This document shows, piece by piece, positions 14,935 through 36,638 of a stretch of 64,000 nucleotides of DNA. Numbering within the stretch: the first letter of the stretch is position 1; each line of letters begins with the position of its first letter. The notes under the pieces were generated by a model. That model did no database searches. It was given only the letters and a program-made list of their open reading frames with translations, and was not told where the DNA came from. The DNA lies in IMG/VR virus record IMGVR_UViG_3300014720_000001, positions 1 through 64,000 of that record; one strand, written 5' to 3'. Made by a program: the position numbers and the translations under genes.

Positions 14935-14955
14935 GCGTTAACTCCGTTGTAACGC
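14935..14955 (-). promoter_or_regulatory. RBS hairpin with ACGGAG hexaloop (CsrA-type site)
   Basis: GCGTTA-C-A[ACGGAG]T-TAACGC directly before the ATG. Confidence 0.6.
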
Positions 14956-15539: not shown

Positions 15540-16345
15540 GCAGTTGGCGTAACAGAGTTAGCGGCTGTAACGTACGCCCCGACGCCGGCTACGTTTATCG
15601 CAGCAACACGGAAGCGATAGGCCGTGCCGTTGGTCAGCCCGGTTACAGTGAATGTCGGCACCGCAGAGACAGGTCGCGCGACCGTTACCCAGTTAGGTGT
15701 GCCGGCGGCTAGTGTGCGTTGAATTCGGTAGTCGGTAATAACCGCGCCGCCATTATTTGTTGGCGCCACCCATGTCAGTACCGCCTGTGCATTTCCGGCG
15801 GCAACCTGTAGTGTTGTCGGCGCGGCTGGGACGTTCGGTGGCGTACCAATCCACGTTTCGCCGCCGGGAAGTAATAGGTCCGCAATGTCGAGCGTGGACT
15901 TTAATCGCTGCACGTCCTCGATAACGTCTTCGATAAACGCTTTAACTTCGGCGCGTGAACGCAGCAGAACGTCAACATAGTTTAGTCGAAACCACGCCGG
16001 GCGATCATTTGGGATCGGCTCGTCTTCGGGATACTCTTCCAGATCGGTCGGGGAGCATACGTGATCAAACGCGCCGACCCGTTCTTCTGCGCCGGGTTTC
16101 AGCGGTAACAACTGGTAGGCAAATATTTTGTCTGGCATCTGTGTCGGATTGCTCGCCGTAATCCGCACCCGAATGCCGTCTGTAGTTTCGTAGTTGTACC
16201 GGCTGACCTGCCACGTAAGTTTGACGTGCCGGCTGCTTCCTGTGGCTGGCGGCGGATCTAAATCGGGCAAATAAAAATTCAGCCCGAGCGTGTCCGGCAG
16301 CGTGATGATTTCTTCGTTGGGGCCCTGCGAGCAACAGTCCGTCAT
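15536..16345 (-). CDS. virion-associated protein with C-terminal fibronectin type III domain
   Basis: PAAPTTLQVAAGNAQAVLTWVAP...ITDYRIQ...VTGLTNGTAYRFRVAAINVAGVG is a canonical FN3 pattern. Confidence 0.85.
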   Translation of the reverse strand: MTDCCSQGPNEEIITLPDTLGLNFYLPDLDPPPATGSSRHVKLTWQVSRYNYETTDGIRVRITASNPTQMPDKIFAYQLLPLKPGAEERVGAFDHVCSPTDLEEYPEDEPIPNDRPAWFRLNYVDVLLRSRAEVKAFIEDVIEDVQRLKSTLDIADLLLPGGETWIGTPPNVPAAPTTLQVAAGNAQAVLTWVAPTNNGGAVITDYRIQRTLAAGTPNWVTVARPVSAVPTFTVTGLTNGTAYRFRVAAINVAGVGAYVTAANSVTPTA

Positions 16346-16352
16346 GATATCT

Positions 16353-16625
16353 TTACTCCGTTAATACGCGGGCTGTAATGTTTACTGGCCCCGGCGTGGT
16401 TGAGCGGACATACGCGAGCGCCAGTCCCTCGTTGTCAGTGGGTCCGGGTTGTGTGATTTGCGCGCTCGGGTTGTCGGCAAGAATTTCTACTTGGCGGCCG
16501 GCAACAGGTCGGTCGCAGTCGTCGCGAAGGCGGATTTTGACGACAGCAGCTTGTGCCCCATTGGCTAAGACCTGCGGCTTCGAACCATAAAGCAGCTTCG
16601 AGTGCGTGGGGCTTACGTAGCTCAT
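16353..16625 (-). CDS. stand-alone bacterial Ig-like (Big_1/invasin-type) domain protein
   Basis: VLANGAQAAVVKIRLRD..DRPVAGRQVEI...TDNEGLA...STTPGPVNITARV. Confidence 0.75.
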   Translation of the reverse strand: MSYVSPTHSKLLYGSKPQVLANGAQAAVVKIRLRDDCDRPVAGRQVEILADNPSAQITQPGPTDNEGLALAYVRSTTPGPVNITARVLTE

Positions 16626-17042: not shown

Positions 17043-22800
<5,758 letters not shown>

Positions 22801-22801
22801 G

Positions 22802-23713
22802 TTATGTGCAGTTCACTTGCGCGTTTGGTTTCTTTTGCACGGTGATTGTGCCGTTATCGATAAGGATGTTAATCCCCGCGCCGCCGACAAGGTTAACGTT
22901 AGGTCCGCCCATGCCGTTGACTGTAGAGATTAGCTCGTTGCATGCCGGGCCGCCGCTGTAAAATTTGCTGTTTTCCGGCAACGGCTCGCCGACGTACAGC
23001 GGTACTTCTCCATTATTCTCGCACAGCTCGGCGCTAGTATCTCCAGCGCCCGCGCCTTTGGACGCGGTGACGGCAAGCTCATTGGCGCGGTCGGTCTGTG
23101 TGATCAGACAGTTATACCCTTCTTTTAAACGAATGTCGCCCTTCATGCACCGGGCGTTTAACACAATCGGGCGGTTGTCATTGATATCTGTAACGCCGCA
23201 CGGGGGGACTTTTACGCGGGCATAGTTTCCGACGCTGATAGACCGCAAGTATGCCTTGTTTAAGTTTTGAATACGGCTCGGCTCGATTTGGTAGTCGTTG
23301 ACCTGAAGCGTCCAGACGTTATTGACAGCGGCTACGTTAAATGCGGCTAGTAGCGCAGCCAGCGGCCCGGTCGCGATAAACCCGGACCAGATCGGTTCAT
23401 CGGCGCACGGGTTTGTCGTATCCGCGTCCGACTCGCTGTGCGCAATTGCCCACTCGTCGTCTATGTTGGCGCTAAACGTAAGGGCAGCCGGCGTTGCGTT
23501 TGTCTGAAATACAAAGTCAAACAAGTTGCCAGTTTTTGTCACAGACGCGAGCCACACAGTGTGTTCAGTCTCGTCGTAGCGCGCGTCGAGACCCATGATG
23601 AACCCGGCGTCCAGAATGGCGCTTGTGGGCAGCGCCGGAAGCGTTGCGGGTTTGTTGTAGACGAACGGATACGCGCGGTACTCGTTATCGTTGTAAAAGC
23701 CGGGACGAGGCAT
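22802..23713 (-). CDS. baseplate/fibre-associated protein, paralog 5 of a five-gene array
   Basis: [22 protein letters not shown] and STVNG motifs shared with the four upstream genes. Confidence 0.75.
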
Positions 23714-24489
23714 TAGACGACGCTCCTGTCGACCGTATCAATGACGATTGTCTCGTCGTCGGCGTAAATTCGCAACACTGTGTCTGGGGCGGCTTGGTCT
23801 GTTGCTGTAAACGTAAAATTACCAAACTCGTCCGGGCCGCAGCCGTTGATCGTTTTGAGATATCGTTTCGTTGGGAAATCCTCGCTTTGCGGCTCGCACA
23901 GAAATCGGCGGAAAAGCGGCACGCCAATAATATCAATACGAATCACGCCCGGGCCGTCTTGCCGCAGGACAACACCCTGATCACCAACAAGCCAGACGTC
24001 GCCGGTCAGAAACTGTTTTGTTTCCGGTCGAAGCGCCCGCACGCCCGGCTCGTTCGCTGGAATTGCAACGCTAGAAACAAACTCAGTCTGCGCGAGCGTA
24101 AATTCGTACGTGCCGACGCCCCAGCCGGAAAACCGGGCCAACTCTGTCGGTGTAGACAGCAGCATGCCGGCTGGGCGGCCGTACTGATCTTCAAACAGCA
24201 AGACGCCGTCGGCGGGCGGGCTGAGTGGGTTGTATGTTGTCGTCGCGCGGGCGGCTAGTTCTGCGTCGCCGACTGTGATTGTCAGCGTCTGCGTCGTCAC
24301 TGTGATTGCCGAGATATACACACGCTGCTGCCCGCCAATAATGAAAAAAGACGCGTCAATAAACGTATCTGGCGCAATTGAAATGCTGGCGTCAGCTTCG
24401 CTTTGCAGCGTGGCGGAATCGGCAAACGGGTAGCGTGACGCTGCCTGCTCGTCGCGAAACTCGGGAAATAGAATTCGAGCGCCTGACAT
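23713..24489 (-). CDS. baseplate/fibre-associated protein, paralog 4
   Basis: SRYPF, GDVWLVGDQGV and KTINGCGPDEFGN motifs. Confidence 0.75.
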   Translation of the reverse strand: MSGARILFPEFRDEQAASRYPFADSATLQSEADASISIAPDTFIDASFFIIGGQQRVYISAITVTTQTLTITVGDAELAARATTTYNPLSPPADGVLLFEDQYGRPAGMLLSTPTELARFSGWGVGTYEFTLAQTEFVSSVAIPANEPGVRALRPETKQFLTGDVWLVGDQGVVLRQDGPGVIRIDIIGVPLFRRFLCEPQSEDFPTKRYLKTINGCGPDEFGNFTFTATDQAAPDTVLRIYADDETIVIDTVDRSVV

Positions 24490-26219
24490 TACTGCACCAC
24501 AAATTTGTTGAAGAACGTCGACGCTTGATTGGTAAACAAACCAATTGAACCGGTGACAGCGCCCGGGTTTGTAAGATCCGTAAACCCACTCAGCGGTTGC
24601 GCGCCGTCAAGCTCTGCTACAGAGAACGTGACCGTCAAATTGGTGCCGTTCAAATTCAGGCTCGCGTACATGCGATACCACGTATTTGTTTTAGCGTTAT
24701 AGTTGACTGCCAGCTCTTCTGTGAAAACGTTGTCCGTGTAGCGCAGCACCCGAACCTTTCCGCGCGTGCCGTCTACGAGTACGACGACGTAACGCGTGAC
24801 TACCTGATCGAGTTCTAACGTCTGTACGTAATTTAATACGAGGCCGCCGTTACGCGCTGCACCGTTTGTACCCAGTTTAAACTCGGTCATGATCGAGTGA
24901 TTGAGTGCCCAATCGGTCGCGCAGTTTTTCAACACGGCGATATTCAAACCACCAATCCCGGTTGCAACGTACGTGCCGTGGTTTGTAAGCCCGGCGCCGA
25001 TGTTGGGTTGAAATTCACCGGGGCTGCAGTTACCGCAGATCGGCGGCGCAAGTGTTTCTTGCGGAGCGAACGCGCCGGTTTTAGTAACAAAATGCGCGCT
25101 CGGCTGGCACGACCCGAAGTCAATACACAGCGGCAGCGGCATGCAAGGATAGTTGGGTGTCTCCAGCGTCTCGTCTACGATCAAGTCGATGGCTTGCGTC
25201 GGGTCCGGCCAGCAGTATTCGTCCAGCACGATGTCTGTGTCTTCGTAATTAGCGCCGGTCCAGCGGTACACCTTGTTTGTGTCGTAAGCAACGTACAGTT
25301 GATTAAGCTCGCCCGCCGCAGGAAAGTCATCGCGCGTCGGGCGCATGATGACATTTTCGCCGGTTAAGTCACAGCACAAGTCTTTGAACTCTTGTGGTGG
25401 TTTTGGCTTATTCGCGTCGCACACTTCTTGCAGACCGGTTTCCGTGACTATGTCTGCGCCGCCGCAATCTTCAAAGTTAATTGCGTTGAAACCGTCAAAG
25501 ATAATGTCAATGTTGCCGTCGCAGTCTGGCGCCACGCCATTGATCGTTTCAATCGGCGACTTAGCGCACGTGCCGCTCTCCGGGCGCTGCGCGCATGGAC
25601 CTAAAAACGTGGACAGCGGGTTGTAATCGCCAGTGACCAGCGCGCTATCGAGGCGAAATACGATCGCCGGGTAATCTACCGACTCGTATTCGATCGTTTC
25701 GTATTTGGCGGTCACCGGCGATGTGCCGAGCAAGTTTACGACGCCCTGTAATGACGTGCCGAGATTAATTTTGCCGAGTGTCGGAATGGGGAGCGGGCGA
25801 TACGGGCGCGCGTTGCGTGGTTGCACCAGCGTCTGCCGCGCCGTGCTGTAGCGCCCCGCAAACGGCGTATCGACGCCCGGGCCGAAGGCGACCCAGCCGG
25901 ACACGCCCGGGACAAGCGGCGTAACCAGATAATTTACGTATGGCGTAACAGGCCGCGGCGCTGAGACAGCGCAAAGCGTCGGGCCGCTTTCGTCCAGTCC
26001 GTTAACGACGCCAAAAAGTATTGTTGCGATGCCAGCGGATACAGTGATCCCCTGCACATATACGTACTCGCCCAGCGGGCTTGGAAAACGGATGTGGCAG
26101 TCAACAATGATATCTTCGCGAATAAACGCGCCGGCATCGTCGACACCTGTCGAGATGTCGTCGAGCGGGTAGCGCCGCGTAGACTGCAGGTTGTACCAAT
26201 TTTGATTACGAATCGCCAT
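24489..26219 (-). CDS. baseplate/fibre-associated protein, paralog 3, with beta-rich (lectin-like) C-terminal domain
   Basis: WYNLQSTRRYPL, GVVNLLG and ETINGVAPDCDGN motifs; C-terminal GGLVLNY...NTWYRMYASL...GSIGLF resembles a ConA-like beta-sandwich. Confidence 0.72.
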   Translation of the reverse strand: MAIRNQNWYNLQSTRRYPLDDISTGVDDAGAFIREDIIVDCHIRFPSPLGEYVYVQGITVSAGIATILFGVVNGLDESGPTLCAVSAPRPVTPYVNYLVTPLVPGVSGWVAFGPGVDTPFAGRYSTARQTLVQPRNARPYRPLPIPTLGKINLGTSLQGVVNLLGTSPVTAKYETIEYESVDYPAIVFRLDSALVTGDYNPLSTFLGPCAQRPESGTCAKSPIETINGVAPDCDGNIDIIFDGFNAINFEDCGGADIVTETGLQEVCDANKPKPPQEFKDLCCDLTGENVIMRPTRDDFPAAGELNQLYVAYDTNKVYRWTGANYEDTDIVLDEYCWPDPTQAIDLIVDETLETPNYPCMPLPLCIDFGSCQPSAHFVTKTGAFAPQETLAPPICGNCSPGEFQPNIGAGLTNHGTYVATGIGGLNIAVLKNCATDWALNHSIMTEFKLGTNGAARNGGLVLNYVQTLELDQVVTRYVVVLVDGTRGKVRVLRYTDNVFTEELAVNYNAKTNTWYRMYASLNLNGTNLTVTFSVAELDGAQPLSGFTDLTNPGAVTGSIGLFTNQASTFFNKFVVQ

Positions 26220-26222
26220 GGT

Positions 26223-27833
26223 TTAGCACGGTGCTTCTGTTTTGCCTTCGGCGTTACAAAACAACGTCTGTGTTGTTTCAGCAAGCGCGGCAAGGGGCGG
26301 TAATCCGTCGTTCAAGAGCTGCCCGCAGTTTGTAAGAATCGGTTGGTTTGTGGCTGCGTTAGCGCCCGTCAGCATACCAGTTACAACGTATGGCCCGCGG
26401 GCACGTGTATCTTCAACGGCCGGGTTTGTCGGATCATATTGCGAAAACTTCAATCGAAACTGGACATACGCAGAGTCACCCGGTTTGAGCTGAGGAAAGA
26501 CGGCAGAGTATTGAAAACCGTCTCCCGAGACCGAGATACCGACGCCACGACCGCGAATACCCGGGGCGTACATAGACGTATATCCGCACTCCAGTGTCGG
26601 CCGCACGGCGACGGAGGTTTGCGTTTCCGGATCTGCTGGCACAAAATTTCCGCTGACTGTTAATGTCAGTGTGACCCGCGTCGGCTCCACGCACGTTTCG
26701 CAGGGGTTGCACAGCATCATGACAATGTCCATGTACGGACACCGCTGCGGCACCATGAGTAGGCGCAGCGGTTGTTGCACGCTGCACGATCGCTGATCAA
26801 GCCAGCGCGCAATGTTGTTCTCGTGTTCTGTGCGCACCTTTTCTGCGCGCTGGCCGATGAGCTTGTAGCGATAACTGGTTTCGTTCATGTACTTGGCGGT
26901 GTTTGCATAGTCGTCACAACCGCAGCACGGATCGCAGTCAGCGCCTATTTGTTGGTGCGCGGTAGTCGACGGGTTTACCGGGTATGGCGCAGTCAGGCCG
27001 ACCGTCACCGGTCGTCGCAACCACAGGCAGTCAGTCGCAGCCAGTCGGAAGTCTCCGACCGTTGCGGTCACGCCGTTGATCTTTGTGATCGGTACCGCAA
27101 CGCCGCCGGGGCAGTTCCCGTACCGTCCCAATCCCGTCCCAGCCACCGCGCGAAAATTTACTGACGTCACGTTACGGAAATTTTTTACTTCACTGACGCC
27201 GGGCACGATTTCTGTGTTGTAGCCGTTTACAAACTTAAAGCTTCCCTGATAGCGCGCGGTAGTGGTCTGACCGTTACGTACCCGCATAGACAGCAGGCGC
27301 CGCGGCATTTTGTACACCGCACGCTCGTCAAGGCGCGCGTTTGCCGGCGTAAGCGATTTATTGTAGTTGCGGCGCGTATCGTCGTCGGTCTGCCCGTTGT
27401 CTTCGTCTGGCCACGTGTTGTAGCGCACCAGCCGGCATACCGCTCGTGCGGTTTTCCACTCGTATATCGTGTAATCGGCGCTCCACGGCTGCGCGTTAAA
27501 CGTTGTGCCGGGCAGCGTAGTGTCGATAATGACGCGATTCAACGAGTCGACAATGACGATGTCTGCCGCGTGCGTCGGCGTCGGAAAACCACTGGCTGGT
27601 GTGTTTTCAACGCAGCCCAACCCGTATAGATATTTAATTCGCATCGGGTGGGCAGCGGGCGTGACTGCTGGGTCATACTCGCCGGCGTCGTCATACGACA
27701 GGTGCAAGTCGGCAATGAGGTAGCGAATATCAGCTGATGGTGCGACCAGCGGATAGTCCAACCCGCTCTGCGGCTGCACTACGCCGAGCCCGGCGCGACC
27801 GTGTTTAGATAGTTGAAAATCGGGGCATGTCAT
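26223..27833 (-). CDS. baseplate/fibre-associated protein, paralog 2
   Basis: LDYPL, GSFKFVNGYN and TKING motifs, then CDPCCGC followed by a coiled-coil-like segment. Confidence 0.72.
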   Translation of the reverse strand: MTCPDFQLSKHGRAGLGVVQPQSGLDYPLVAPSADIRYLIADLHLSYDDAGEYDPAVTPAAHPMRIKYLYGLGCVENTPASGFPTPTHAADIVIVDSLNRVIIDTTLPGTTFNAQPWSADYTIYEWKTARAVCRLVRYNTWPDEDNGQTDDDTRRNYNKSLTPANARLDERAVYKMPRRLLSMRVRNGQTTTARYQGSFKFVNGYNTEIVPGVSEVKNFRNVTSVNFRAVAGTGLGRYGNCPGGVAVPITKINGVTATVGDFRLAATDCLWLRRPVTVGLTAPYPVNPSTTAHQQIGADCDPCCGCDDYANTAKYMNETSYRYKLIGQRAEKVRTEHENNIARWLDQRSCSVQQPLRLLMVPQRCPYMDIVMMLCNPCETCVEPTRVTLTLTVSGNFVPADPETQTSVAVRPTLECGYTSMYAPGIRGRGVGISVSGDGFQYSAVFPQLKPGDSAYVQFRLKFSQYDPTNPAVEDTRARGPYVVTGMLTGANAATNQPILTNCGQLLNDGLPPLAALAETTQTLFCNAEGKTEAPC

Positions 27834-27836
27834 AAC

Positions 27837-28778
27837 TCACCCCGTTGTGCAGCCGGAATCGCCGAGCTGGCTTCCCAAGACCACAAGGCTCATTTGCGTG
27901 ACCTCAGAGCCCAGCCGAGTAATAAAATTCTGCAGCGTAGTCACACCGTCACCAAAGCGATTGATCTGATTAACAATCGCATCAAGTTCGGTGCAGCCAC
28001 AGCAGGGTTGCGCGCACGTGTCGGCAAACTTTAAACCGTTGCTCATCGGCGTAATCTGAATACAGTCGTCCGGCGCGATGATGAAGTTGCCGTCGGTGCT
28101 GCATACGCCATTAATGCACCGGATGCAGTCACCAATTTCTGGCACTTCGCAGTAGCACTCTTCGTTGAGGTTTGTACCGGAGATGGCGTCAAAGATGATG
28201 TCCGTCTCTGCGCCCGACGTAACCGCCGTAATACGCACGTTGTTCCCGGCGACCAGTGTTACGTCGCCGTAGATGGGCGCGCTGAGTTCGCCGTTGTTGG
28301 ATACGCGCAGCCGAGTAACTGCGCGCAGCGTCGGCCGAATTGCGTCGGTTTCCAGCTCACCCGCCGCGCGCGAAAATGAGTACAGCCCGGGCGGCAGCTG
28401 ATCTACTTCGTCGAGCGCACCCAGCACGACGCGACCAACGCAGTCGTCAAAGTCACCGACACCGCCAAGCGCATACGAGCGGTTTGGCTGGTAATTGCTG
28501 CGGATAATATTGGCCGCGGCAACATCAACTGCGGTGCCGTTGTTATCGTAGCCAACCGTAATATTAAAACCGGTCGGCGCAATCAGCACGCTTCTGATAA
28601 AGAAGTTATTGGGCGCGAAAGCTAATCCAGAATGAATTGGTAAATACAGCGCAACAATAAAGCTGTCAGGCAGTCGAATCGTGCCTGTGCTGTCGAGTTT
28701 GGTGGCGCGCTCTGTCAGCGGGTATGACCGCTGCGAGTTATGGTTGAGCCATTGTAGATTCCAGTTTCCAATCGGCAT
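27837..28778 (-). CDS. baseplate/fibre-associated protein, paralog 1
   Basis: WLNHNSQRSYPL, GDVTLVAGNNV and RCING motifs, then CAQPCCGC followed by a coiled-coil-like segment. Confidence 0.75.
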   Translation of the reverse strand: MPIGNWNLQWLNHNSQRSYPLTERATKLDSTGTIRLPDSFIVALYLPIHSGLAFAPNNFFIRSVLIAPTGFNITVGYDNNGTAVDVAAANIIRSNYQPNRSYALGGVGDFDDCVGRVVLGALDEVDQLPPGLYSFSRAAGELETDAIRPTLRAVTRLRVSNNGELSAPIYGDVTLVAGNNVRITAVTSGAETDIIFDAISGTNLNEECYCEVPEIGDCIRCINGVCSTDGNFIIAPDDCIQITPMSNGLKFADTCAQPCCGCTELDAIVNQINRFGDGVTTLQNFITRLGSEVTQMSLVVLGSQLGDSGCTTG

Positions 28779-28791: not shown

Positions 28792-30756
28792 TTATGTTGC
28801 GCTATAGACGATACCTGTGACGCGCAGTACGCCGATTTCTCCGTATACGTTGTCTTCTACGCGGCCAAGCGTGACGAGTACCGTGTCGCCCTCAGTCACA
28901 GCGAAGGCGGCACTATCGCGCTGAATAGCACGATCAATGTATAAGTTTGCGCTAGAGTTAAACGTGAGGGCTGTGTCGGTCGTGGGTAGGGATTGCCCGT
29001 CGCCTTCCGGCGTAGGCGGCCGCGCAATAATACGCCGCGTCATGTAAAGTGACGGCATAACCTTGCGCTGCGATTGTGTGCCGTCGCGGCCGAACAACTG
29101 CACGCGAATTTTCATCATCAGGTTGTCGCCGAGATTGCTGCCCGGTACGTTAAACCGCAACCGCAACAACGCTGCTTGACTACCCGGGAAACCCAGATAC
29201 GGGATGTCCATATACAAGCGCTCAACGGTATCGCTCAGCCGAATGATCTGCGGCGAAATTTCGCGTTCAACAAGTTGATCTGTGTAGTCAATTTTAAGTA
29301 AGCCCTGATGCAGTGTAATCGGGGCAGTGGTCGTTAAATTGAATTGCTGCTTTTCGCTAGTTGTGAGCACGCGCGGTGTGCCGCGCGACCCGCGAATAGA
29401 AATTTGGCTTGACGTTGTAAACGCGCCCTCAGCCACCCAGCCCCGCAGTAATTGATGCCGGTTTACAACACCTTTTACGGCCTGCCCGCCGAGCGCGTCT
29501 GTCGAGGAAATCTGTAGATCAAGATTTAACTGCAGATCGCCCGTAGACGCCGAGGCATCAGCACAATTTGTAATCGAGATCGGACTAGTAACTGTTGTGC
29601 TTGTTGGCGCGGTAGGTGTTGTTGCATTGTTCGCGTCGTCAACATTTTTGACGAGACTTGTTACCGCGTTTCTGTCGTTGCCGGCTAACATCCGGACATA
29701 AATCACCGAAAGGCGCATGTCTTCAAGGCGACAAGGACCAGTTGGACCAGAAACACCTGTTGCGCCTGTCGGACCGGTCGGACCGGTCGGCGCGGGTGGA
29801 TTTGTGATCTGCCAGTCGCGCGGCCACGGTACGTCGCCGTAGCAGTTGCTCATCCACCAGATGCCGTTCATGTCTACGATCGCGGCGCCGTCTGGCCCGA
29901 GCGCGATTTCACTACCACCGCGACGACCTCGTCCCTTGTCCCACACGAGCGCGACCGATTGTAACGGAACTGGCGGCCACGCCTGCGACAACGAAGCGTG
30001 TTGCGCTAAGTTGTAACCGAACAGCGCGCCGGACGGAGCTTTTCCGGCAAACGACGGGTGGTTAGCCGGCAACCAGCCCGGCAAATTTGCGTTGGGGTTG
30101 TTGATGCGGTGTCGTGTGTGGTCGCCGGGATTTGTGAATAACGCGTGCACACCAGCCGGCTCTGTGACAAGCTCAAAACGATAATGCGTGTGCTCGTCAA
30201 TAAAGTCGCGCACACTCGGCATGACCAGCACGCGCGGTACAGTCGTGCAACTATCTTTTGGGCCCTGCACCAGACACACACTTACTGTGACAGGCGGTTT
30301 TTGCTTTACAAGTTTGCCGGCATCAGCTGCGGACAAATAATAACGGCCGGGCGTAATTGGGCCGGCGATCGCGTTTTGCAGTTCCGGCATATCTACAATG
30401 CCGCGCAACACAATGTCGCCGGTTGTTTCCGCGCGTTTTGACAGGCAGATGCCGACGCAGTAAGAGGACGGCTGCATGACCAGCGTCTGCGTTGCCGGCT
30501 CCGGTTCGACAGCCGCCAAAGCGCGTTCGTATCTTTTTTCAACCCAGTTCCAGTAGACGGGTTGACCGGGTAGAACATCCGGCGAAATGCTGACGTTGCT
30601 GTCAACAAGCACGCGACCCAACGCAGCAGCGTCGAGGCGGTCTTTGAGATAATCGGTGCGGTCCTCTAGCGTGCGGTCTGGGCGTGAAACGACACCAGCC
30701 TGTACAGGCTCGCCGGGATTAACATGCTTAATGTTGTGTAGCCAGTTACCGGACAT
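28792..30756 (-). CDS. tail/baseplate structural protein with a short collagen insert
   Basis: GDIVLRGIV...ITPGRYYLSAADAGKLVKQKPP is typical of phage tail proteins; internal [18 protein letters not shown]. Confidence 0.72.
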   Translation of the reverse strand: MSGNWLHNIKHVNPGEPVQAGVVSRPDRTLEDRTDYLKDRLDAAALGRVLVDSNVSISPDVLPGQPVYWNWVEKRYERALAAVEPEPATQTLVMQPSSYCVGICLSKRAETTGDIVLRGIVDMPELQNAIAGPITPGRYYLSAADAGKLVKQKPPVTVSVCLVQGPKDSCTTVPRVLVMPSVRDFIDEHTHYRFELVTEPAGVHALFTNPGDHTRHRINNPNANLPGWLPANHPSFAGKAPSGALFGYNLAQHASLSQAWPPVPLQSVALVWDKGRGRRGGSEIALGPDGAAIVDMNGIWWMSNCYGDVPWPRDWQITNPPAPTGPTGPTGATGVSGPTGPCRLEDMRLSVIYVRMLAGNDRNAVTSLVKNVDDANNATTPTAPTSTTVTSPISITNCADASASTGDLQLNLDLQISSTDALGGQAVKGVVNRHQLLRGWVAEGAFTTSSQISIRGSRGTPRVLTTSEKQQFNLTTTAPITLHQGLLKIDYTDQLVEREISPQIIRLSDTVERLYMDIPYLGFPGSQAALLRLRFNVPGSNLGDNLMMKIRVQLFGRDGTQSQRKVMPSLYMTRRIIARPPTPEGDGQSLPTTDTALTFNSSANLYIDRAIQRDSAAFAVTEGDTVLVTLGRVEDNVYGEIGVLRVTGIVYSAT

Positions 30757-30780
30757 CCTTGTCCTCCGGCGGTTAGTTGA

Positions 30781-31413
30781 TTACAGGAACGCGACATCCC
30801 ACGTGATACCAATCTGGGACGACGCTTCCTTTGTTACTTGATTCGCGCCAGAGAAAACTGTGCGCGCAAATATGACGTCTTTTGACCGGTCGCTCAGTAC
30901 GGGTGCGGCTACAAGCGCTGCAGCGTACACGCGGCTATTGCTTGCACTACTGAACTGTTTACTCGTGCCCGAATAAACAACTCGCGCTTCGGACGTCTGC
31001 GCAAAAAACGTCAATTGGTTTCCGGATTGATTTACGGGCAGGTTTGCTTCGTACCCGGACGACACGCTCAACGCCGGCTCGATGCTCAGCGGCACCCGAA
31101 GAAAATTACGGGTTTGCGAGTCAACAAGCGAGTTGTAGTACGTAATGTCGACGTTACGACCGAAGCTAGGCGTTGAAATTACCTGTTCTGGCGCAGCGTT
31201 CTCGTACTCGATATACATTGCCGAGATGTGATAGTCGAGGCGGTCGGGCTGCCGGCGGTAACCAAGTTGTTTTGCCGCGATGAATCCCCAGCCATATTGA
31301 ATCTGATTCGCTTGCGAAAAGAGCGGTGTTTTCAAACCAGTCTTTTCGTCAATGCGCCACACCGCCACGTGACCGCGTACGCCAAAAGCGGGGATAATGT
31401 TATCAGCAGTCAT
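30781..31413 (-). CDS. baseplate/tail structural protein
   Basis: RGHVAVWRIDE...NQIQ N-terminus and a terminal beta-rich motif (KEASSQIGITWDVAF); position in the baseplate cluster. Confidence 0.65.
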   Translation of the reverse strand: MTADNIIPAFGVRGHVAVWRIDEKTGLKTPLFSQANQIQYGWGFIAAKQLGYRRQPDRLDYHISAMYIEYENAAPEQVISTPSFGRNVDITYYNSLVDSQTRNFLRVPLSIEPALSVSSGYEANLPVNQSGNQLTFFAQTSEARVVYSGTSKQFSSASNSRVYAAALVAAPVLSDRSKDVIFARTVFSGANQVTKEASSQIGITWDVAFL

Positions 31414-31422
31414 GTGTTGTCC

Positions 31423-33147
31423 TTATTGACATGTGCCCGACACGAGCCGGGCTGTGGCGCCCAAATCGCTGACTAGTGATACCGGAATCTCGTCTGTTTG
31501 CGGCGCCATTCCCTTAAACCGTGTGACAGCTTCAAAAATGTCGGTTTCTGGGGTTATCTTATCTTTATCCGCCGTCAGCTCGAAAACCACGATCATTGCC
31601 GTTTGTGGCGGCAATAACTGACGTAGATGCCTAATATTGTACAATCCCAGCTGATCGAACCCTAGCGCGCCGACCGAGATTCTGACGACAAATACGTTGT
31701 TGCGCAATACGTTTTCAACGAGGAAACGCAGCGGGTTAATTGTCTTGGGTAGCTGGCTGGTTGTCGGTTCCGTTGCGGCATTAACACGCTTGTCGAGTAA
31801 ATGCGCCAGTGTGCCTATTTTTAGTTTTGCCGCGCAGTCGGGTTGTGTTTTGCGGAACTCGGCGGCCGCGACGCCGCGGGCGTGGACCTCATCAAAAAAG
31901 TATTCGACGTCCGCCGGGTAACCTCCCAGCCGAAACTTTACATATGTATACCCGCTCTCATGCTGCGCATTAACTTCGAGCGGCACGTTCCTGTTTTCAA
32001 ACACAAGATCGCCGTAAAAACACGACGACAGGAAACCGCTGTCAAGCGCCAGCGCGGCGAGAGTTTTACGCACCGGCTGACATTGCTCGTCGTTCGGGTC
32101 AACAAGCAATTCTTCTTCCGTTTCGGTCGTAAGCGTTTCCCACGCGTTGCTAGTCAAAATGTTGTTCGGCGGCGGGCAGCATAGCACCGCATTTTCATCT
32201 GGCCGGGCGTAAGTGTTGCCAACAAAAAATTCATGCACATCGACGCCGTGTACCAGCGGCGTGCCGGCCGTAATTGTTTGCTCGACTTCGACACGCGGGA
32301 CAGCGTTTTCTGGAAAACGGTATACAGCTTTATCGGTAACGATCAGCAGACCGCGATAGTCGTTATCAACACGCTCGACAGTCTCGACAGGGCCGACGCT
32401 GATTGGCAAACCACAGATCGCCGAAATGGCGGAGTCGATTATTGCTGCTGTAGCGCCGCCTTCGACTAGCCCAGAAATAACTGCATTTGTTAAATCTTTG
32501 TAGCCCTGACTTGTGCGCAGCTTGATACCGACCGCGTATGCAAACTGGTTGAACACGTTGTCGTAATCAAATTGACCACAAAAACTCCAGAGCGTAAGTT
32601 CTTCGTCGTCGCCGCTGTCTGTCGCAGGTCGTTTTGTAAATACGGGGTTGTCAAACGGATCTTTGACAAAAACAATTGCGCCGCGTTCTAAGTCGATCAG
32701 AAAGTCGACGTTTTTGACGAGTACGCCGGTCGGAAACGTGATGCGATTAAAAAGTTGCGTCACGTCAACGAGCGCGGACGGTAGCGGGAAAGAAAAAAAC
32801 GGCGCGTCGGTGGCGGCGTCAAAACGTAAATTGTTGTTGTTAAACACTTCGTTGCCGCGGTCAAGTCGCGCAATGGTCGTACGCGCTGAGTTACGTTCTG
32901 ATTTTTTGAGCACGAGCGGCGACAGTTTTTCTGTGTGAAACAGCGGAACGTCAAACCGACTTAACGCCTCAATTGTTTCGAGCAGGTTGTGGTACGTCTG
33001 GTTTGCAACGTGTGCTGTAGCGTCGACATACGAGTGAACCTGATCGACGCCGGTGTAAGTGCGCGCCCAAAAGCTGCCGAGCGCCGCAATCAAATTACGG
33101 CTGCGATCAAAGTCTGACCCCGGATATACAAACTCTGGTTTTTTCAT
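31423..33147 (-). CDS. baseplate wedge protein (gpI/gp7-like position)
   Basis: Directly downstream of baseplate J-like gene; ALGSFWARTY and IRHLRQLLPPQTAMIV motifs. Confidence 0.6.
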   Translation of the reverse strand: MKKPEFVYPGSDFDRSRNLIAALGSFWARTYTGVDQVHSYVDATAHVANQTYHNLLETIEALSRFDVPLFHTEKLSPLVLKKSERNSARTTIARLDRGNEVFNNNNLRFDAATDAPFFSFPLPSALVDVTQLFNRITFPTGVLVKNVDFLIDLERGAIVFVKDPFDNPVFTKRPATDSGDDEELTLWSFCGQFDYDNVFNQFAYAVGIKLRTSQGYKDLTNAVISGLVEGGATAAIIDSAISAICGLPISVGPVETVERVDNDYRGLLIVTDKAVYRFPENAVPRVEVEQTITAGTPLVHGVDVHEFFVGNTYARPDENAVLCCPPPNNILTSNAWETLTTETEEELLVDPNDEQCQPVRKTLAALALDSGFLSSCFYGDLVFENRNVPLEVNAQHESGYTYVKFRLGGYPADVEYFFDEVHARGVAAAEFRKTQPDCAAKLKIGTLAHLLDKRVNAATEPTTSQLPKTINPLRFLVENVLRNNVFVVRISVGALGFDQLGLYNIRHLRQLLPPQTAMIVVFELTADKDKITPETDIFEAVTRFKGMAPQTDEIPVSLVSDLGATARLVSGTCQ

Positions 33148-33149: not shown

Positions 33150-34865
33150 TCAGCTAGTCCACCCGCCGGCAACAACAGAAATTGACACATCTTGCGGGCT
33201 TGTCAGAAACGCAGTAGTGCGCGCTGTGACAAGTCGTGAGGGATCGTGCGGCACCTGCAGAATTGTGTTGTCGCGCACGTACGCTGTGGTGCCGTCTGGG
33301 CGGCGGATGCGTCCAAACATATCAATACTACCGAGCGCCTGCTGGCCGGTTAGATATTGATGCGCTGCAGTGCTGATAAGTGACGCGTGCAGCTGGCCAG
33401 TAAAACCTACTCCGGCCACGGCTTTGCTCACGGCTTTTTTAATAGCGTCCAAATCCGGCGACGGTTCCGCGGCCTGTTTGCGGATTTCAAATGAAATCTT
33501 TGTGAAACACGGCACTGGCGCTTTTACAAGTACGTCTGCGCCGCGCGCCCGAGTATCGCGCGCTGCCATGTAGTCTTGCAGCTCTGCTATCAACGGTAGC
33601 CCACTTGTCGTGACCAAATACAGCCGGCGCGTTTGATTTGCCGTCAGCGTTGAGTTGGGCTGGAGGTCTGGGTTTACAAACCGAATCGTAGCCGTCTGAT
33701 AACGGGTATATGCGCTTTCGGGCAGATACAGCAGATCTGGAATGAAATCAAAGTCTGAGAAGTCTACGTTCCGGTCGTCGCTGAGTACCGAATAGTTAAC
33801 CGGTGTTTCCGACAACGGATCAATGATTTGCGCAATTTCATAAAAGCCGGGAGCAAGGTCGCGTGCAATTGAAATCTGCCAGATCGTGCCCGTTGGGGCG
33901 CCGCCAACAAGCGCGTTGTCGTCGCACGGGCCGGATGTGTTCTGCGCGGGCGAATAGGGCCCGACGTACGTTGCTTCTAAAAGATGTTCGCGTTCTTGCG
34001 AGTAGGCGTTCGTGTGCGCATAGATATCAACTTTACCTCCGCCAGAAATCGGAAACAGGGAGTGTTGATCGCGCTGTTGTTCCGTGTCCCCGCAGCCGAG
34101 CACAGAAAAATGCAGAGTGTTGGCGAACACGGCTTGCGATTTAAGGGCAGCAATATAACTTTGCCGGCTGCCGATTGTTTTCGCTGCGAGGCCCGTCGAT
34201 AAACGGGTCAAATACTCGGCGTTTGTTGCGGCGTCACGCCCCTCGATAAAGTCGGTGCTTGCGTACAGATCTACGACGTTACTGATTGAACCCAGAGTCG
34301 TCAGCTTTGTGCGTCGCCTAATATTTCCGGCCGCGCCAACGTCGCTCGCGATGACGACGATGGTCGCCGCGTACGTGCCGTCGCCAACGGCAACCATTTT
34401 TCGTTGGTACGGCTCTGTGACAACCGCCGTAGGCGCTGTCGGCAGAATCGTAAAATTTTGAGTGGGCGAAAAGCTGATGCTGCCGTCTTCAAGCCCAAAG
34501 ATCGCGTCTGTTGTAATTTCAGTTTGAATGTCGGAGTTTAAAACAAGCGTGACGTAACCAACCGCGGGCGAGCCGTTGTCTCGCGCGACGTTAAAGTTAG
34601 ACAGCACTTGATCAACAACGTCGACGTCAGCCAGCTCGGGGTTTTCTGTGATCTTTAACAGGCTTTGACTCTGTTTGACGCGCTCGATGTTTTCTTGGAT
34701 TGCGGCGTTGAGCAAACCGTCGAAATACAGAACGAGGTCATGAAACACGCCGCGGGTCAGTTCAACTTCTGGGTGGCGCTCCGCCATCAGCTGCGACAAC
34801 GTCGCTACCATGGCTTGTACTTTTTCTGGGTTAAGTTGCGTGAGGCTTGAGATTTCGATGGGCAT
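33150..34865 (-). CDS. baseplate J-like wedge protein
   Basis: VIASDVGAAGNI...FIEGRDAATNAEYLTRL...IGSRQSY matches the baseplate J/gp6 pattern; start MPIEIS at 34865 with GGTG SD. Confidence 0.8.
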   Translation of the reverse strand: MPIEISSLTQLNPEKVQAMVATLSQLMAERHPEVELTRGVFHDLVLYFDGLLNAAIQENIERVKQSQSLLKITENPELADVDVVDQVLSNFNVARDNGSPAVGYVTLVLNSDIQTEITTDAIFGLEDGSISFSPTQNFTILPTAPTAVVTEPYQRKMVAVGDGTYAATIVVIASDVGAAGNIRRRTKLTTLGSISNVVDLYASTDFIEGRDAATNAEYLTRLSTGLAAKTIGSRQSYIAALKSQAVFANTLHFSVLGCGDTEQQRDQHSLFPISGGGKVDIYAHTNAYSQEREHLLEATYVGPYSPAQNTSGPCDDNALVGGAPTGTIWQISIARDLAPGFYEIAQIIDPLSETPVNYSVLSDDRNVDFSDFDFIPDLLYLPESAYTRYQTATIRFVNPDLQPNSTLTANQTRRLYLVTTSGLPLIAELQDYMAARDTRARGADVLVKAPVPCFTKISFEIRKQAAEPSPDLDAIKKAVSKAVAGVGFTGQLHASLISTAAHQYLTGQQALGSIDMFGRIRRPDGTTAYVRDNTILQVPHDPSRLVTARTTAFLTSPQDVSISVVAGGWTS

Positions 34866-34872
34866 GCAGCAC

Positions 34873-35346
34873 CTACGGTAAAGTAGCGACCGGTACAAGG
34901 ATCTCGCGCGAGTCGCCAGCCCGACTCGTAATGGCGATGCCGAGGTTCATGAACCCCGGCAACAATCCGACCGACAGCAGCTCGGCGTCATCAAGGCGCT
35001 CGTCGTCGGGCATTCCTTCATATTCTTCGTTTCGCAGTGTGACGCGAATACGCATGTTTGCGGCGTGAAACGTTTGCGTAACATTGAGCTGTGTTTTGAG
35101 CGTTCCTTGCCGCACAAACTTCATAAAATCACAACCGCGCTCGGGTAGTCCGGGCATAGACCCGCGCTCTGTTAAAAACTCTAACAGCCAGCGTTGCGCA
35201 AGCTTTTGCGGCCCGGCGCATATTTTGCCGGCGTTGTCGTTCGAATAAAGAACGAGATCGAGCCGGCCTGTACGCGACGAGCTGTCACGCTGCAGCGCAA
35301 GGAAGTCGTACTTTCTGTTTGCGTAGTCGGCGAGCGTCATGATCAC
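34873..35346 (-). CDS. baseplate wedge / sheath initiator (gp25/GPW-like)
   Basis: GPQKLAQRWLLEFLTERGS...PERGCDF; size and position directly upstream of baseplate J. Confidence 0.72.
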   Translation of the reverse strand: MIMTLADYANRKYDFLALQRDSSSRTGRLDLVLYSNDNAGKICAGPQKLAQRWLLEFLTERGSMPGLPERGCDFMKFVRQGTLKTQLNVTQTFHAANMRIRVTLRNEEYEGMPDDERLDDAELLSVGLLPGFMNLGIAITSRAGDSREILVPVATLP

Positions 35347-35825: not shown

Positions 35826-36638
35826 TTAAAAAGAACCCTGTGTGTACTGCTTGTCCAACATCGCTTGGATTTTTGCTGCGCGCTGGCTGACGGCACCGGG
35901 AGTAATGTTTAAGCGGCGCGCAATATCTTGCGTACTTGCTTTGCGCCGGCCGTTTCGTCCCAGCGTCATGTCGGCAATTAATTTGTCGACCGGGCCGAGA
36001 TCGTCATATACAAACTTAAACCACGCGTCAGCGGCCTGATTGCTGTTTGGAATTGTGCTGGCCACGTCGCCGCCGTAGCTTTCTTCGTCCATAACTTCTC
36101 GTGTCGTCATACCCTCAGATACTGGCTGATTGAACGCCCGAATTTTTTGAATACGACGGGTCGAGAGTCCGGTGGCGTCGGCGATTTCATCGTCACTTGG
36201 ATCGCGCCCAAGCTGATCGCGCAGCTCGTTCTCGCTTTCACTTAGGCGCGTGTAATCAAGCCCCACCTGTTCGGGTATTGATATGATATTCTGATTCTGC
36301 GCAGACAGGCGGCGGAGGCTCTGCAGTTGCGACAGTAAATGTGTGCGGACGTTGCCGCGGGCGGGGTCATAAGTATCGAGCGCTTTGAGCGCCATAAGCT
36401 TTGCGCGTGACCGGATTGTTGGACTTGCGGACTGTCCGGCGTAGCTCATAACGGCGGTATCAATTACAGGCTGCAGCGTCTGGAGCAGGGCGGTGCTCGT
36501 CTCCGGCGTTTTGTTCGCGGTCCACTGCGGATACAGATTGTCGAAGTCAGGGCTGACGCCAGCTGGCTTTTTCCCAGAAAACGGCGGCGGAGTATCCCCC
36601 AAGATCGAGGGCATGCCGGTTTGTGTTGTGTTTTTCAT
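35826..36638 (-). CDS. sigma-70 family RNA polymerase sigma factor
   Basis: Region 2 ALKALDTYDPARG...IISIP, region 3 ELRDQLGRDPSDDEIADATGLS, region 4 HTH STQDIARRLNITPGAVSQR; likely start at 36638. Confidence 0.85.
   Translation of the reverse strand: MKNTTQTGMPSILGDTPPPFSGKKPAGVSPDFDNLYPQWTANKTPETSTALLQTLQPVIDTAVMSYAGQSASPTIRSRAKLMALKALDTYDPARGNVRTHLLSQLQSLRRLSAQNQNIISIPEQVGLDYTRLSESENELRDQLGRDPSDDEIADATGLSTRRIQKIRAFNQPVSEGMTTREVMDEESYGGDVASTIPNSNQAADAWFKFVYDDLGPVDKLIADMTLGRNGRRKASTQDIARRLNITPGAVSQRAAKIQAMLDKQYTQGSF

What the first reader, a model, noticed from the sequence alone, without database searches (positions are those of the whole stretch)
22802..28778. Five consecutive diverged paralogs share a hidden three-motif architecture
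Seen: all five genes share three elements. (a) An N-terminal YP[LF] motif: RSYPL, LDYPL, RRYPL, SRYPF, RAYPF, three preceded by [WF]xN. (b) A central G-x-[VIF]-x-[LF]-x-x-G-like strand: [44 protein letters not shown]. (c) An [IV]NG turn: RCING, TKING, ETING, KTING, STVNG. Two of them also end the core with PCCGC plus a coiled coil. Inference: an ancient five-fold duplication yielding a hetero-oligomeric baseplate periphery or a set of fibre sockets, placed between the wedge genes and the collagen fibres.
Basis: partly seen in the sequence, partly recalled or inferred. Interest (0 to 1): 0.6.

Follow-up and report, generated by a model that had tools for sequence, protein, structure and literature searches.

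The report
Five paralogous baseplate-fibre proteins in a jumbo phage
Five neighbouring genes of an uncultured 205-kb phage are ancient copies of one unannotated, probably trimer-forming tail protein, kept in the same order in every relative found, between the baseplate wedge genes and the variable fibre genes.

Summary
The five minus-strand genes A-E (27837-28778, 26223-27833, 24489-26219, 23713-24489, 22802-23713) are homologous. Profile-profile comparison gives 94-99% probability for 8 of 10 pairs (E 1e-21 to 2e-7). The two weakest, B-C and B-D, give E 5e-5 and 9e-5. The best of 35 negative controls gives E 0.03. The array A-B-C-D-E stands at the same place in all 72 related phage loci that reach past the first gene. 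In a tree, four of the five positions form their own clade and the fifth is not resolved, so the duplications predate this large uncultured clade. No Pfam, PHROG, PDB sequence or fold match exists. A homotrimer model of A passes its controls (0.50 against 0.00). Its interface is the motif-b/c half plus the C-terminal coiled coil, and the N-terminal beta-sandwich stays outside. A is more conserved than the baseplate J protein. B and C carry variable distal modules, a ConA-like one in C. The next gene is a length-variable fibre with a conserved N-terminus. Best reading: a conserved adaptor layer of trimeric baseplate-periphery proteins. Mixed-chain assembly was not tested. Precedents are phiKZ gp131-135 and T4 gp10-12, with no detectable homology to phiKZ gp131-135 and no fold match to any solved structure.

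The parts
27837..28778 (-). Gene A (313 aa, P0001). It is the most conserved paralog and the hub of the family. Layout: N-terminal beta-sandwich, trimer stalk, PCCGC, C-terminal coiled coil.
26223..27833 (-). Gene B (536 aa, P0002). Residues 160-330 are homologous to A134-286. The N-terminal domain has diverged. The C-terminal ~190 aa are an unassigned, Cys-rich extension.
24489..26219 (-). Gene C (576 aa, P0003). The core is residues 1-269, followed by a variable C-terminal extension.
23713..24489 (-). Gene D (258 aa, P0004): core only.
22802..23713 (-). Gene E (303 aa, P0005): core with insertions. It is the most diverged member and is detectable only with profiles.
28716..28724 (-). Motif a (YPL) of A, at the start of the confidently modelled N-terminal domain.
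27747..27755 (-). Motif a (YPL) of B.
   Evidence: the alignment to the other families is not significant on its own
26163..26171 (-). Motif a (YPL) of C.
24424..24432 (-). Motif a (YPF) of D.
23663..23671 (-). Motif a (YPF) of E.
28239..28268 (-). Motif b of A (residues 171-180), inside the modelled trimer interface.
27216..27245 (-). Motif b of B (residues 197-206).
25725..25745 (-). Motif b of C (residues 159-165).
23983..24003 (-). Motif b of D (residues 163-169).
23111..23140 (-). Motif b of E (residues 192-201).
28107..28124 (-). Motif c of A (residues 219-224, ending in ING), inside the modelled trimer interface.
27072..27089 (-). Motif c of B (residues 249-254).
25536..25553 (-). Motif c of C (residues 223-228).
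23842..23859 (-). Motif c of D (residues 211-216).
22913..22930 (-). Motif c of E (residues 262-267).
27993..28007 (-). PCCGC of A (residues 258-262). C259, C260 and C262 are invariant in the 54 A-family sequences and in the 35-row alignment that includes the most distant loci.
26916..26930 (-). PCCGC of B (residues 302-306). C303 and C304 are 100% conserved and C306 is 98%.
27864..27992 (-). C-terminal coiled coil of A (residues 263-305).
   Evidence: AF2 helix; weak PDB coiled-coil hits; heptad contacts at 265-300 in the trimer model
26793..26915 (-). Segment after PCCGC in B (residues 307-347). Its first ~25 residues align to A's helix. Coiled-coil nature was not tested.
24492..25037 (-). 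C-terminal domain of C (residues 395-576), probably a ConA-like lectin/glucanase jelly roll.
   Evidence: language-model feature search, scores 0.93-0.95, 9 of the 10 best named hits in one clan; no Pfam or PDB hit; present only in close C orthologs
34873..35346 (-). Context: n157, probably a gp25-like wedge protein.
   Evidence: its profile weakly hits baseplate wedge subunit 9euf_L (E 0.003), a Photorhabdus chain (0.25) and Afp9 (0.58)
33150..34898 (-). Context: 582-aa baseplate J-like (gp6-like) wedge protein.
   Evidence: Pfam PF04865, E 7e-11, 42.3 bits against a cut-off of 21.1
28792..33147 (-). Context: three conserved genes between J and A. They are n574, n210 and n654. n654 is fibre-like, with a short G-X-Y run.
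18010..22800 (-). Context: the sixth gene (1596 aa). It has a conserved Cys/Pro-rich N-terminus, tandem Cys-rich repeats and a long collagen-like G-X-Y region. Its length varies from 225 to 1620 aa among relatives.
17043..18008 (-). Context: 321-aa collagen-like protein.

Best explanation
A-E are five ancient paralogs of one previously unannotated virion protein family of a large clade of uncultured ~200-kb contractile-tail phages.

Each protein has three parts. The first is an N-terminal beta-sandwich domain that begins at the RxYP[LF] motif. The second is a Cys-rich beta stalk that carries the GD[VI]xLxxGxN and [IV]NG motifs. The third is a paralog-specific C-terminal end: PCCGC plus coiled coil in A and B, extra distal domains in B and C, and nothing in D and E.

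The stalk half is where chains pack against each other. A, and by homology probably the others, forms a parallel trimer with three free N-terminal domains and the C-terminus pointing outward.

Together the five form a conserved adaptor layer on the periphery of the baseplate, between the wedge proteins and the length-variable collagen-like fibre encoded next. B and C add accessory binding modules.

Shown: homology, age, synteny, conservation level and a trimer model for A. Inferred: location on the virion, trimer state of B-E, adaptor role.
For: Homology of all five: hhalign E 1e-21 to 9e-5, against controls no better than 0.03.

Cross-family HMM hits: for example, the clean E profile hits A orthologs at 2e-13 and the D profile hits them at 5e-20.

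Age and non-redundancy:
- The order A-B-C-D-E is present in all 72 of 74 loci that extend beyond the first gene, including those where A is only 27-33% identical.
- In the tree, positions A, C, D and E are each one clade (SH-aLRT 93-97). B is unresolved. The whole labelling needs the minimum of 4 changes.
- There are no further copies in the 204.6-kb genome.

Tail context: gp25-like n157, Baseplate_J, and a strictly conserved block sig280-n156-n157-J-n574-n210-n654-A-E followed by variable fibres.

Structural-core behaviour: median identity to the window over 48 loci is A 65, D 54, J 53, E 47, C 43 and B 40. The fibre gene gives 39 over half its length.

Tight coupling: gaps of 3, 3, -1, -1 and 1 nt, including two TAATG overlaps.

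Trimer: A x3 scored ipSAE 0.50 against a best control of 0.00. The runs agree in at least 77% of contacts and partner pLDDT is at least 72. This mark was reached by 20 of 30 solved homo-pairs and by 1 of 23 proteins solved as single chains. The interface is residues 151-256 plus heptad positions 265-300. This region has pLDDT ~60 in the monomer model, while the N-domain has ~90.

Outward-facing C-termini:
- Some A orthologs carry extra C-terminal domains after the coiled coil.
- A B ortholog has Laminin_G_3 (6e-13) and a C ortholog has an FGE-sulfatase/C-type-lectin-like domain (1e-15).
- C's own C-terminus looks ConA-like.

The gene after E keeps a conserved N-terminus while its length varies from 225 to 1620 aa. 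This is what is expected of a fibre that docks on a conserved platform.
Against: There is no direct evidence that any of the five is in the virion: no isolate, proteome or map exists.

No known fold or family matches, so function rests on context.

The trimer test is a model's own confidence. It was run with three copies, outside the tool's two-copy calibration, and with my own alignment. A coiled coil is easy for such models to pair. Dimer, tetramer and mixed-chain assemblies were not compared.

The trimer state of B-E is an extrapolation. The monomer models are only moderate (pLDDT 73 and 79).
Confidence: 0.55

Rival explanations
1. One reading: the paralogs co-assemble into mixed-chain oligomers. 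Examples would be heterotrimers in the shared stalk, or an A/B hetero-bundle through their PCCGC and helix segments. These would form a pseudo-symmetric fibre base, as proposed for phiKZ gp131x3/gp133/gp134/gp135.
For: The positions conserved across the paralogs (motifs b and c) lie in the modelled chain-chain interface. A and B are most alike exactly in the stalk, PCCGC and helix half (E 1e-21), while their N-domains differ. All five are always present together and are translationally coupled. phiKZ offers a structural precedent of consecutive paralogs in one fibre base (PMC13250141).
Against: That homotrimer already passes by itself. Gly/Asn-rich conserved motifs may reflect turn geometry rather than shared interfaces. 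D and E have no helix and C has at most a remnant Cys pair (DLCCD), so an A/B-type bundle cannot include them.
Confidence: 0.25
2. Five independent receptor-binding short fibres or spikes. They would share only a common anchor domain and each recognise a different host surface structure, as in the branched multi-tailspike sets of CBA120-like phages.
For: The architecture is a shared N-terminal core plus different C-terminal ends. Lectin-like modules occur in C and in B and C orthologs. The lengths of B (454-816 aa) and C (294-1228 aa) vary among orthologs.
Against: D and E are core-only and have no distal domain. A is the most conserved protein of the whole baseplate block, unlike typical host-range determinants. 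The truly variable gene is the next one. The shared core spans ~250 residues, including the oligomerisation half, not just an anchor.
Confidence: 0.12
3. The five proteins join end to end as segments of one long jointed fibre, as T4 gp34-gp37 do.
For: They are consecutive, co-transcribed, partly homologous genes next to fibre genes, and they show a trimer propensity.
Against: All five keep the same globular N-terminal domain, which suits parallel docking better than serial joining. The core is short and not fibre-repeat-like. Nothing here tests this reading.
Confidence: 0.05
4. They are not virion components. They would be assembly chaperones or other non-structural proteins encoded within the tail module.
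For: Only the lack of any direct evidence of virion incorporation.
Against: Their sizes, Cys-rich beta architecture, coiled coil and lectin- or Ig-like C-terminal additions in orthologs fit exposed structural proteins. So does conservation at wedge-protein level across a huge clade. Fibre chaperones are usually small and single-copy.
Confidence: 0.04

Closest known systems
phiKZ gp131-gp135 (Pseudomonas jumbo phage; PMC13250141)
   Same: Both are five consecutive same-strand tail genes that are paralogs (NC_004629 134482-141381). They share an N-terminal domain followed by a helix and differ in their C-terminal parts. The phiKZ proteins are placed on the outer periphery of the baseplate as the base of the fibres. 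Both sets begin with a short [YL]P[FL] motif near the N-terminus.
   Different: No detectable homology: hmmsearch E is at least 0.01 in a six-sequence database, and hhalign probability is at most 3%. No tblastn hit in 50,697 phage records. phiKZ is modelled as a six-helix-bundle hetero-hexamer with a seven-bladed propeller at the gp131 C-terminus. Here the shared core is a beta-sandwich plus a Cys-rich beta stalk, only A and B have the long helix, and A models as a homotrimer.
T4 gp10, gp11, gp12 (PMC3004832)
   Same: They are sequential genes on one polycistronic mRNA. All are trimers on the baseplate periphery and are inferred to derive from one primordial fold, with homology hidden at sequence level. 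They link the wedge to the short fibres.
   Different: T4 has three paralogs, not five. The T4 relation is seen only in structures, whereas here it is recoverable by profiles. No gp10, gp11 or gp12 chain appeared in Foldseek or VIA-align searches with the A or D models, and none appeared in PDB profile searches.
CBA120 / Ackermannviridae TSP1-4 branched tailspike complex (PMC8825819; abstract seen)
   Same: Several adjacent genes encode trimeric proteins with related N-terminal assembly or anchor domains and different distal parts. They form one complex on the baseplate.
   Different: Those are enzymatic beta-helix tailspikes that set host range and vary strongly. A-E are conserved at wedge-protein level, two are core-only, and no sequence match to the solved TSP chains was found.
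Collagen type III C-terminal cystine knot (Cys-Cys next to a trimeric helix; from my own knowledge, not tested)
   Same: An invariant adjacent Cys-Cys (PCCGC) sits exactly where three chains enter a parallel coiled coil in the A trimer model. The same operon encodes collagen-like fibres.
   Different: This is analogy only. Disulfide or metal binding was not examined, and the flanking structure is a coiled coil, not a collagen helix.

Membership tests
One paralogous family comprising A-E (the claim itself) | Significant profile-profile similarity between every pair, above negative controls | tested here: met
   E 1e-21 to 9e-5.: 35 controls, best E 0.032. The B-C and B-D pairs are the weakest (60-66% probability), but both B and its partners link strongly through A.
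One paralogous family comprising A-E (the claim itself) | Duplications older than the clade: each position forms its own orthologous group | tested here: met
   A, C, D and E are each one clade (SH-aLRT 93-97), B is unresolved, and the labelling needs the minimum of 4 changes.: clean HMMs assign positions 1-5 to A-E in the most distant loci.
phiKZ gp131-like fibre-base paralogs | Sequence or profile homology to the gp131/133/134/135 N-terminal domain | tested here: not met
   hhalign probability at most 3%, E 0.014-0.75. Only a short N-terminal motif lies in register.
phiKZ gp131-like fibre-base paralogs | Mixed-chain (hetero-hexameric) assembly with a helical bundle | not tested
T4 gp10/gp11/gp12 primordial fold | Shared fold: an alpha-helix plus a perpendicular three-stranded sheet plus a second small sheet | tested here: inconclusive
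   No gp10, gp11 or gp12 chain was among the matches. However, the stalk half is poorly modelled in monomers (pLDDT ~60), so absence is weak evidence.
T4 gp10/gp11/gp12 primordial fold | Homotrimers | tested here: inconclusive
   The A x3 model passes (0.50 against 0.00). B-E were not tested, and this is a model, not a measurement.
T4 gp10/gp11/gp12 primordial fold | Location on the baseplate periphery | not testable with these tools
   Only gene context is available: downstream of gp25-like, J-like and n574 genes, and upstream of the fibres.
Pfam / PHROG tail families (Baseplate_J, tail fibre, tail collar and others) | Match above the family threshold | tested here: not met
   no Pfam family at E up to 1. 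PHROG gave only weak, unrelated partial hits for C and E.
ConA-like lectin/glucanase clan (C-terminal domain of C only) | Sequence or structure match to a clan member | tested here: inconclusive
   Feature search: 0.93-0.95 to 3keto-disac_hyd, Laminin_G, GH59_C, GH32C and sialidase-CBM clusters, with 9 of the 10 best named hits in one clan. No Pfam hit in 27 orthologs and no PDB hit. The domain was not folded.
Parallel trimeric coiled-coil fibre proteins | Heptad-patterned C-terminal helix that pairs in register between chains | tested here: met
   Met for A only: helix 263-305, and contacts at 265, 268, 272, 275, 279, 282, 286, 289, 293, 296 and 300 in the model. This is model-level evidence.

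The most novel reading that the evidence does not exclude
The five paralogs are obligate partners of one pseudo-symmetric, mixed-chain assembly of a fold not yet seen in solved structures. The invariant PCCGC Cys clusters of A and B would staple a hetero-bundle that serves as the socket for the collagen-like fibres. That would be a second, independently evolved solution to the phiKZ-type hetero-oligomeric fibre base, in a very abundant uncultured phage clade.
Probability: 0.2. Interest if true: 0.65.

Novelty: new variant of a known kind. Interest (0 to 1): 0.45.

Why it matters
The family is large. An A profile finds 2818 cluster representatives at 50% identity, 513 of them below 1e-30. All members seen are named 'hypothetical', or carry no name at all, in every source. 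Recognising five genes per genome as one family with a defined domain plan gives a handle for annotating the tail modules of a widespread clade of uncultured ~200-kb phages. The plan is an anchor domain, a trimer stalk and an optional distal module.

It also adds a third, sequence-unrelated example, after T4 gp10-12 and phiKZ gp131-135, of baseplate peripheries built by serial duplication of one protein. That bears on how complex baseplates evolve. The variable distal modules of B and C and the variable sixth gene mark where host-range variation is likely to sit.

Tried and rejected
- **Family scans.** Pfam and PHROGs on A-E gave nothing usable. Pfam on 27 C orthologs gave nothing.
- **Sequence searches.** tblastn of A and of the J protein against 50,697 phage records gave no match. 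PDB profile searches with the A, B and C family alignments gave nothing or only generic coiled coils.
- **Fold searches.**
  - The A model against pdb and pdb_via_wide gave only coiled-coil rows, Z at most 5.8.
  - The D model against pdb, pdb_via_wide, atlas and BFVD gave at best Z 5.4, with C2-like beta-sandwiches (Z at most 5.0) filling the rows below, TM at most 0.28, and no E below 0.027. I do not take this as a fold assignment.
- **Language-model search.** A residues 1-262 scored below 0.8, which is uninformative.
- **Large profile search.** The search with A3 listed only A orthologs among its best 150 hits, so no named distant relative emerged.
- **C's C-terminal region (residues 290-576).** The word search found only 34 clusters, all close C orthologs.
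- **phiKZ gp131-135.** Homology was rejected at the level testable here.
- **Neighbour genes.** n574 and n654 profiles against PDB gave nothing credible.
- **Literature.** The 'moraphage' paper (PMC12619734) describes a different lineage of up to 307 kb; I did not pursue it.
- **First grouping.** Best-hit grouping mixed paralogs: 82 'A' members from 73 loci. I rebuilt the profiles from the 53 loci with an unambiguous A-B-C-D-E order before any homology claim.
- **Not run.** Sequencing-read tools and alternative genetic codes were not used.

Full report
**What the window is.**
The window is bases 1-64000 of a 204,621-bp IMG/VR virus record with direct terminal repeats. It has no relative among 50,697 deposited phage genomes. 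The region of the finding holds five tightly packed minus-strand genes:
- A: 27837-28778, 313 aa.
- B: 26223-27833, 536 aa.
- C: 24489-26219, 576 aa.
- D: 23713-24489, 258 aa.
- E: 22802-23713, 303 aa.

The junctions are a 3-nt gap, a 3-nt gap, a TAATG overlap and another TAATG overlap. A 1-nt gap then separates E from the next gene.

**Check of the observation.**
Single-sequence comparison supports only part of the claim:
- A-B is clear (about 1e-7 in a five-sequence database).
- A-C and C-D are marginal.
- E matches nothing.

I therefore fetched 74 related loci with 10-kb flanks from viral contigs, in which A is 28-92% identical. I called their ORFs and classified them with the five window proteins.
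- 53 loci give an unambiguous A-B-C-D-E order by best hit.
- In the most distant loci, position-2 or position-5 proteins hit A better than B or E. Diverged paralogs behave this way.

A first round of profiles built from best-hit groups was contaminated by such cross-assignments, so I discarded it. Clean 54-row alignments from the 53 unambiguous loci plus the window gave these hhalign results:

| Pair | Probability | E-value |
|---|---|---|
| A-B | 99.4% | 1e-21 |
| A-C | 99.0% | 6e-18 |
| A-D | 99.2% | 2e-19 |
| A-E | 98.6% | 1e-15 |
| C-D | 98.9% | 3e-17 |
| D-E | 96.1% | 4e-9 |
| B-E | 94.6% | 7e-8 |
| C-E | 93.8% | 2e-7 |
| B-C | 66% | 5e-5 |
| B-D | 60% | 9e-5 |

I ran 35 negative controls. 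Fifteen compared the profiles with three unrelated neighbour families. Twenty compared them with reversed profiles of the same families, which keep composition, including the cysteines. They never did better than E 0.032 or probability 1.6%.

Motif a is in the same columns in A, C, D and E. B's N-terminal 160 residues are diverged in this lineage. In other lineages, however, the A profile covers B-position proteins over their full length (2e-15, 9e-21, 2e-11).

Within each family the motif positions are among the most conserved:
- The P of YP is 100% conserved in all five families.
- The Y is 87-100% conserved.
- The N of NG is 79-100% conserved.

All five families also share a Cys between motifs b and c that is conserved in at least 95% of orthologs.

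**Age and extent.**
Clean HMMs assign positions 1-5 to A, B, C, D and E in that order, even in the loci where A is only about 30% identical. A maximum-likelihood tree of 90 core sequences used the window plus 17 loci. L072 was left out because only four of its ORFs passed the HMM threshold. The results:
- A, C, D and E are each one clade (SH-aLRT 94, 97, 94, 93).
- B is an unresolved comb.
- The labelling needs 4 changes, the minimum possible. Shuffled labels needed 55 on average, and none of 200 shuffles was as low.

The A profile finds only B, C and D elsewhere in the 204.6-kb genome and no sixth copy. In a library of 1.84 billion representatives it finds 2818 proteins at E up to 1e-3 and 513 below 1e-30. 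All members seen are unnamed or 'hypothetical'. The five-fold duplication is therefore ancient relative to a very large uncultured clade, and every copy has been kept.

**Context.**
The block sig280-n156-n157-J582-n574-n210-n654-A-B-C-D-E is conserved in order across the loci.
- J582 is a Pfam Baseplate_J protein (E 7e-11, above the curated cut-off).
- The profile of n157 has as its only three PDB hits gp25-like wedge proteins of contractile systems. They are weak (0.003, 0.25, 0.58) but coherent.
- n654 is fibre-like, with a short G-X-Y run and weak PHROG tail-collar and tail-fibre hits.

Median identity to the window over 48 loci is as follows:
- A: 65%.
- D: 54%.
- J: 53%.
- n574 and n654: 51% each.
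- E: 47%.
- C: 43%.
- B: 40%.
- The downstream fibre gene: 39%, over only half its length.

The gene after E always starts with the same Cys/Pro-rich ~60 residues, but its length ranges from 225 to 1620 aa. It may or may not carry collagen repeats. In the window it is a 1596-aa protein with tandem Cys-rich repeats and a long collagen-like region, followed by a 321-aa collagen-like protein. A-E therefore belong to the conserved structural core of the tail module, and the variable host-facing part begins with the sixth gene.

**Structure.**
AF2 monomer models of A (pLDDT 73) and D (pLDDT 79) agree on three points:
- A confident N-terminal beta-sandwich (A about 21-150, D about 21-145, pLDDT about 90-95). 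It starts right at the YP motif.
- A less confident C-terminal half made of beta-hairpins (pLDDT about 60-75). This half holds motifs b and c.
- In A only, a helix at residues 263-305.

No search gave a credible match. I searched Foldseek against PDB and BFVD, VIA-align against 48,161 PDB representatives, and the ESM Atlas. The best results were Z 5.4, TM 0.28 and E 0.027. C2-like sandwiches (Z at most 5.0) fill most rows of the VIA-align list for the N-domain, which I treat as a common arrangement rather than an assignment.

A three-copy model of A passes the tool's test:
- Score 0.50, against a best control of 0.00.
- The runs agree in at least 77% of contacts, and partner pLDDT is at least 72.
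- The mark was reached by 20 of 30 solved homo-pairs and by 1 of 23 proteins solved as single chains.
- These counts hold only roughly, because I used three copies and my own alignment.

The interface consists of residues 151-256 plus the a/d heptad positions 265-300. The N-terminal domain takes no part. This explains why the motif-b/c half is poorly modelled as a monomer. It also suggests that motifs b and c mark strands and turns of an inter-chain stalk, while motif a opens the free N-terminal domain. The invariant PCCGC sits exactly at the entry to the coiled coil. A role as an interchain Cys staple, as in the collagen III cystine knot, is my own analogy and untested.

**C-terminal ends.**
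- Some A orthologs continue after the coiled coil with extra repeat or small beta domains.
- A B ortholog carries Laminin_G_3 (6e-13), and a C ortholog carries an FGE-sulfatase/C-type-lectin-like domain (1e-15).
- The last ~180 residues of the window's C most resemble ConA-like lectin/glucanase clusters in a language-model feature search (0.93-0.95; 9 of the 10 best named hits in one clan). Pfam and PDB show nothing. The region from residue 290 on exists only in close C orthologs.
- Ortholog lengths are stable for A (303-359 aa), D (253-317 aa) and mostly E (293-486 aa). They vary for B (454-816 aa) and C (294-1228 aa).

The C-termini thus behave as outward-facing, exchangeable ends, and the N-terminal two-thirds as a fixed core.

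**Best explanation.**
The five genes encode a family of probably trimeric, Cys-rich structural proteins. They form a conserved adaptor layer at the baseplate periphery, between the wedge and the variable collagen-like fibres. B and C contribute accessory binding modules. I put this at about 0.55. The homology and age are shown. The trimer is supported by a model for A only. The location and the adaptor role are inferred from gene context, conservation pattern and domain plan.

**Rival explanations.**
It was not tested and is not excluded.
- Weaker rivals are five independent receptor binders, serial segments of one jointed fibre, and non-virion proteins.

**Comparison with known systems.**
The closest precedent is phiKZ gp131-gp135. 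These are five consecutive paralogs with a shared N-terminal domain and helix. They are modelled as a hetero-hexameric fibre base on the outer baseplate periphery (PMC13250141).

I tested homology directly. Nothing is significant (hhalign probability at most 3%). The phiKZ proteins also begin with a [YL]P[FL]D motif that the top, non-significant alignments place in register with RxYP[LF]. I record this as an unexplained lead.

T4 gp10, gp11 and gp12 are the classical case of sequential, co-transcribed, peripheral baseplate trimers derived from one primordial fold (PMC3004832). No fold match to them was found, but my stalk models are weak.

The organisational principle is therefore known. The protein family and its fold are not matched to anything known, so I rate it a new variant of a known kind.

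**Limits.**
There is no experimental evidence of virion incorporation. 

Noticed in passing
window 35826-36668 (-): A 280-aa sigma-70-like protein is encoded inside the tail/baseplate module (Pfam Sigma70_r3 1.5e-9, plus region-4-like HTH hits). It keeps the same position in nearly all related loci. It is the most conserved gene of the block, with median identity 70%.
   Followed up: partly
window 18010-22800 (-); loci L004-L063, the gene after E: The sixth gene has a conserved Cys/Pro-rich N-terminus of about 60 aa in nearly all relatives. Its length ranges from 225 to 1620 aa. In the window it has tandem ~180-189-nt (60-63-aa) Cys-rich repeats (TRF 20984-21861), then a Gly run and a long collagen-like region. 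Its last ~100 aa are shared with orthologous fibres.
   Followed up: partly
window 17043-18008 (-) and 18010-18300 (-): The 321-aa collagen-like protein and the 1596-aa protein end in a similar way. Both have a GPCGN-type Cys within the last G-X-Y triplets, followed by a short helix-like tail. This could be a shared trimerisation or registration element (read from the translations).
   Followed up: no
loci L048, L049, L050, L075: In these relatives, 3.5-4.5 kb of extra genes are inserted between A and B. In L049 the insert includes a collagen-like gene, giving the order A-col-B-C-D-E-col. The A/B junction therefore tolerates insertions, while C/D/E stay contiguous.
   Followed up: no
L039:12479-16162 and L048:14451-17513: A C ortholog carries an FGE-sulfatase (C-type-lectin-like) domain, E 1.4e-15. 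This fold is often used by diversity-generating retroelement targets. A B ortholog carries Laminin_G_3, E 6e-13. I did not look for a DGR.
   Followed up: no
L083 (phiKZ NC_004629) 9483-16382 compared with window A-E: phiKZ gp131, gp133, gp134 and gp135 start with [YL]P[FL]D. The top hhalign hits put this in register with the RxYP[LF] motif of A, C, D and E, but they are not significant. This may be convergence or very remote kinship of N-terminal docking segments.
   Followed up: partly
window 45732-48617 (-) and 39618-44282 (-): A 961-aa protein has a weak DUF2345 hit, the VgrG-type spike region (E 0.003, below the cut-off). A 1554-aa ORF lies upstream of the baseplate genes. They are candidates for the central spike/hub and the tape measure.
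   Followed up: no
window 17397-18101 (+), 18023-18556 (+), 18680-19075 (+), 19217-19537 (+): Long plus-strand ORFs lie opposite the collagen-coding regions. They are most likely artefacts of the G-X-Y codon repeat (GC 0.61-0.63, strong AT skew), not genes.
   Followed up: no
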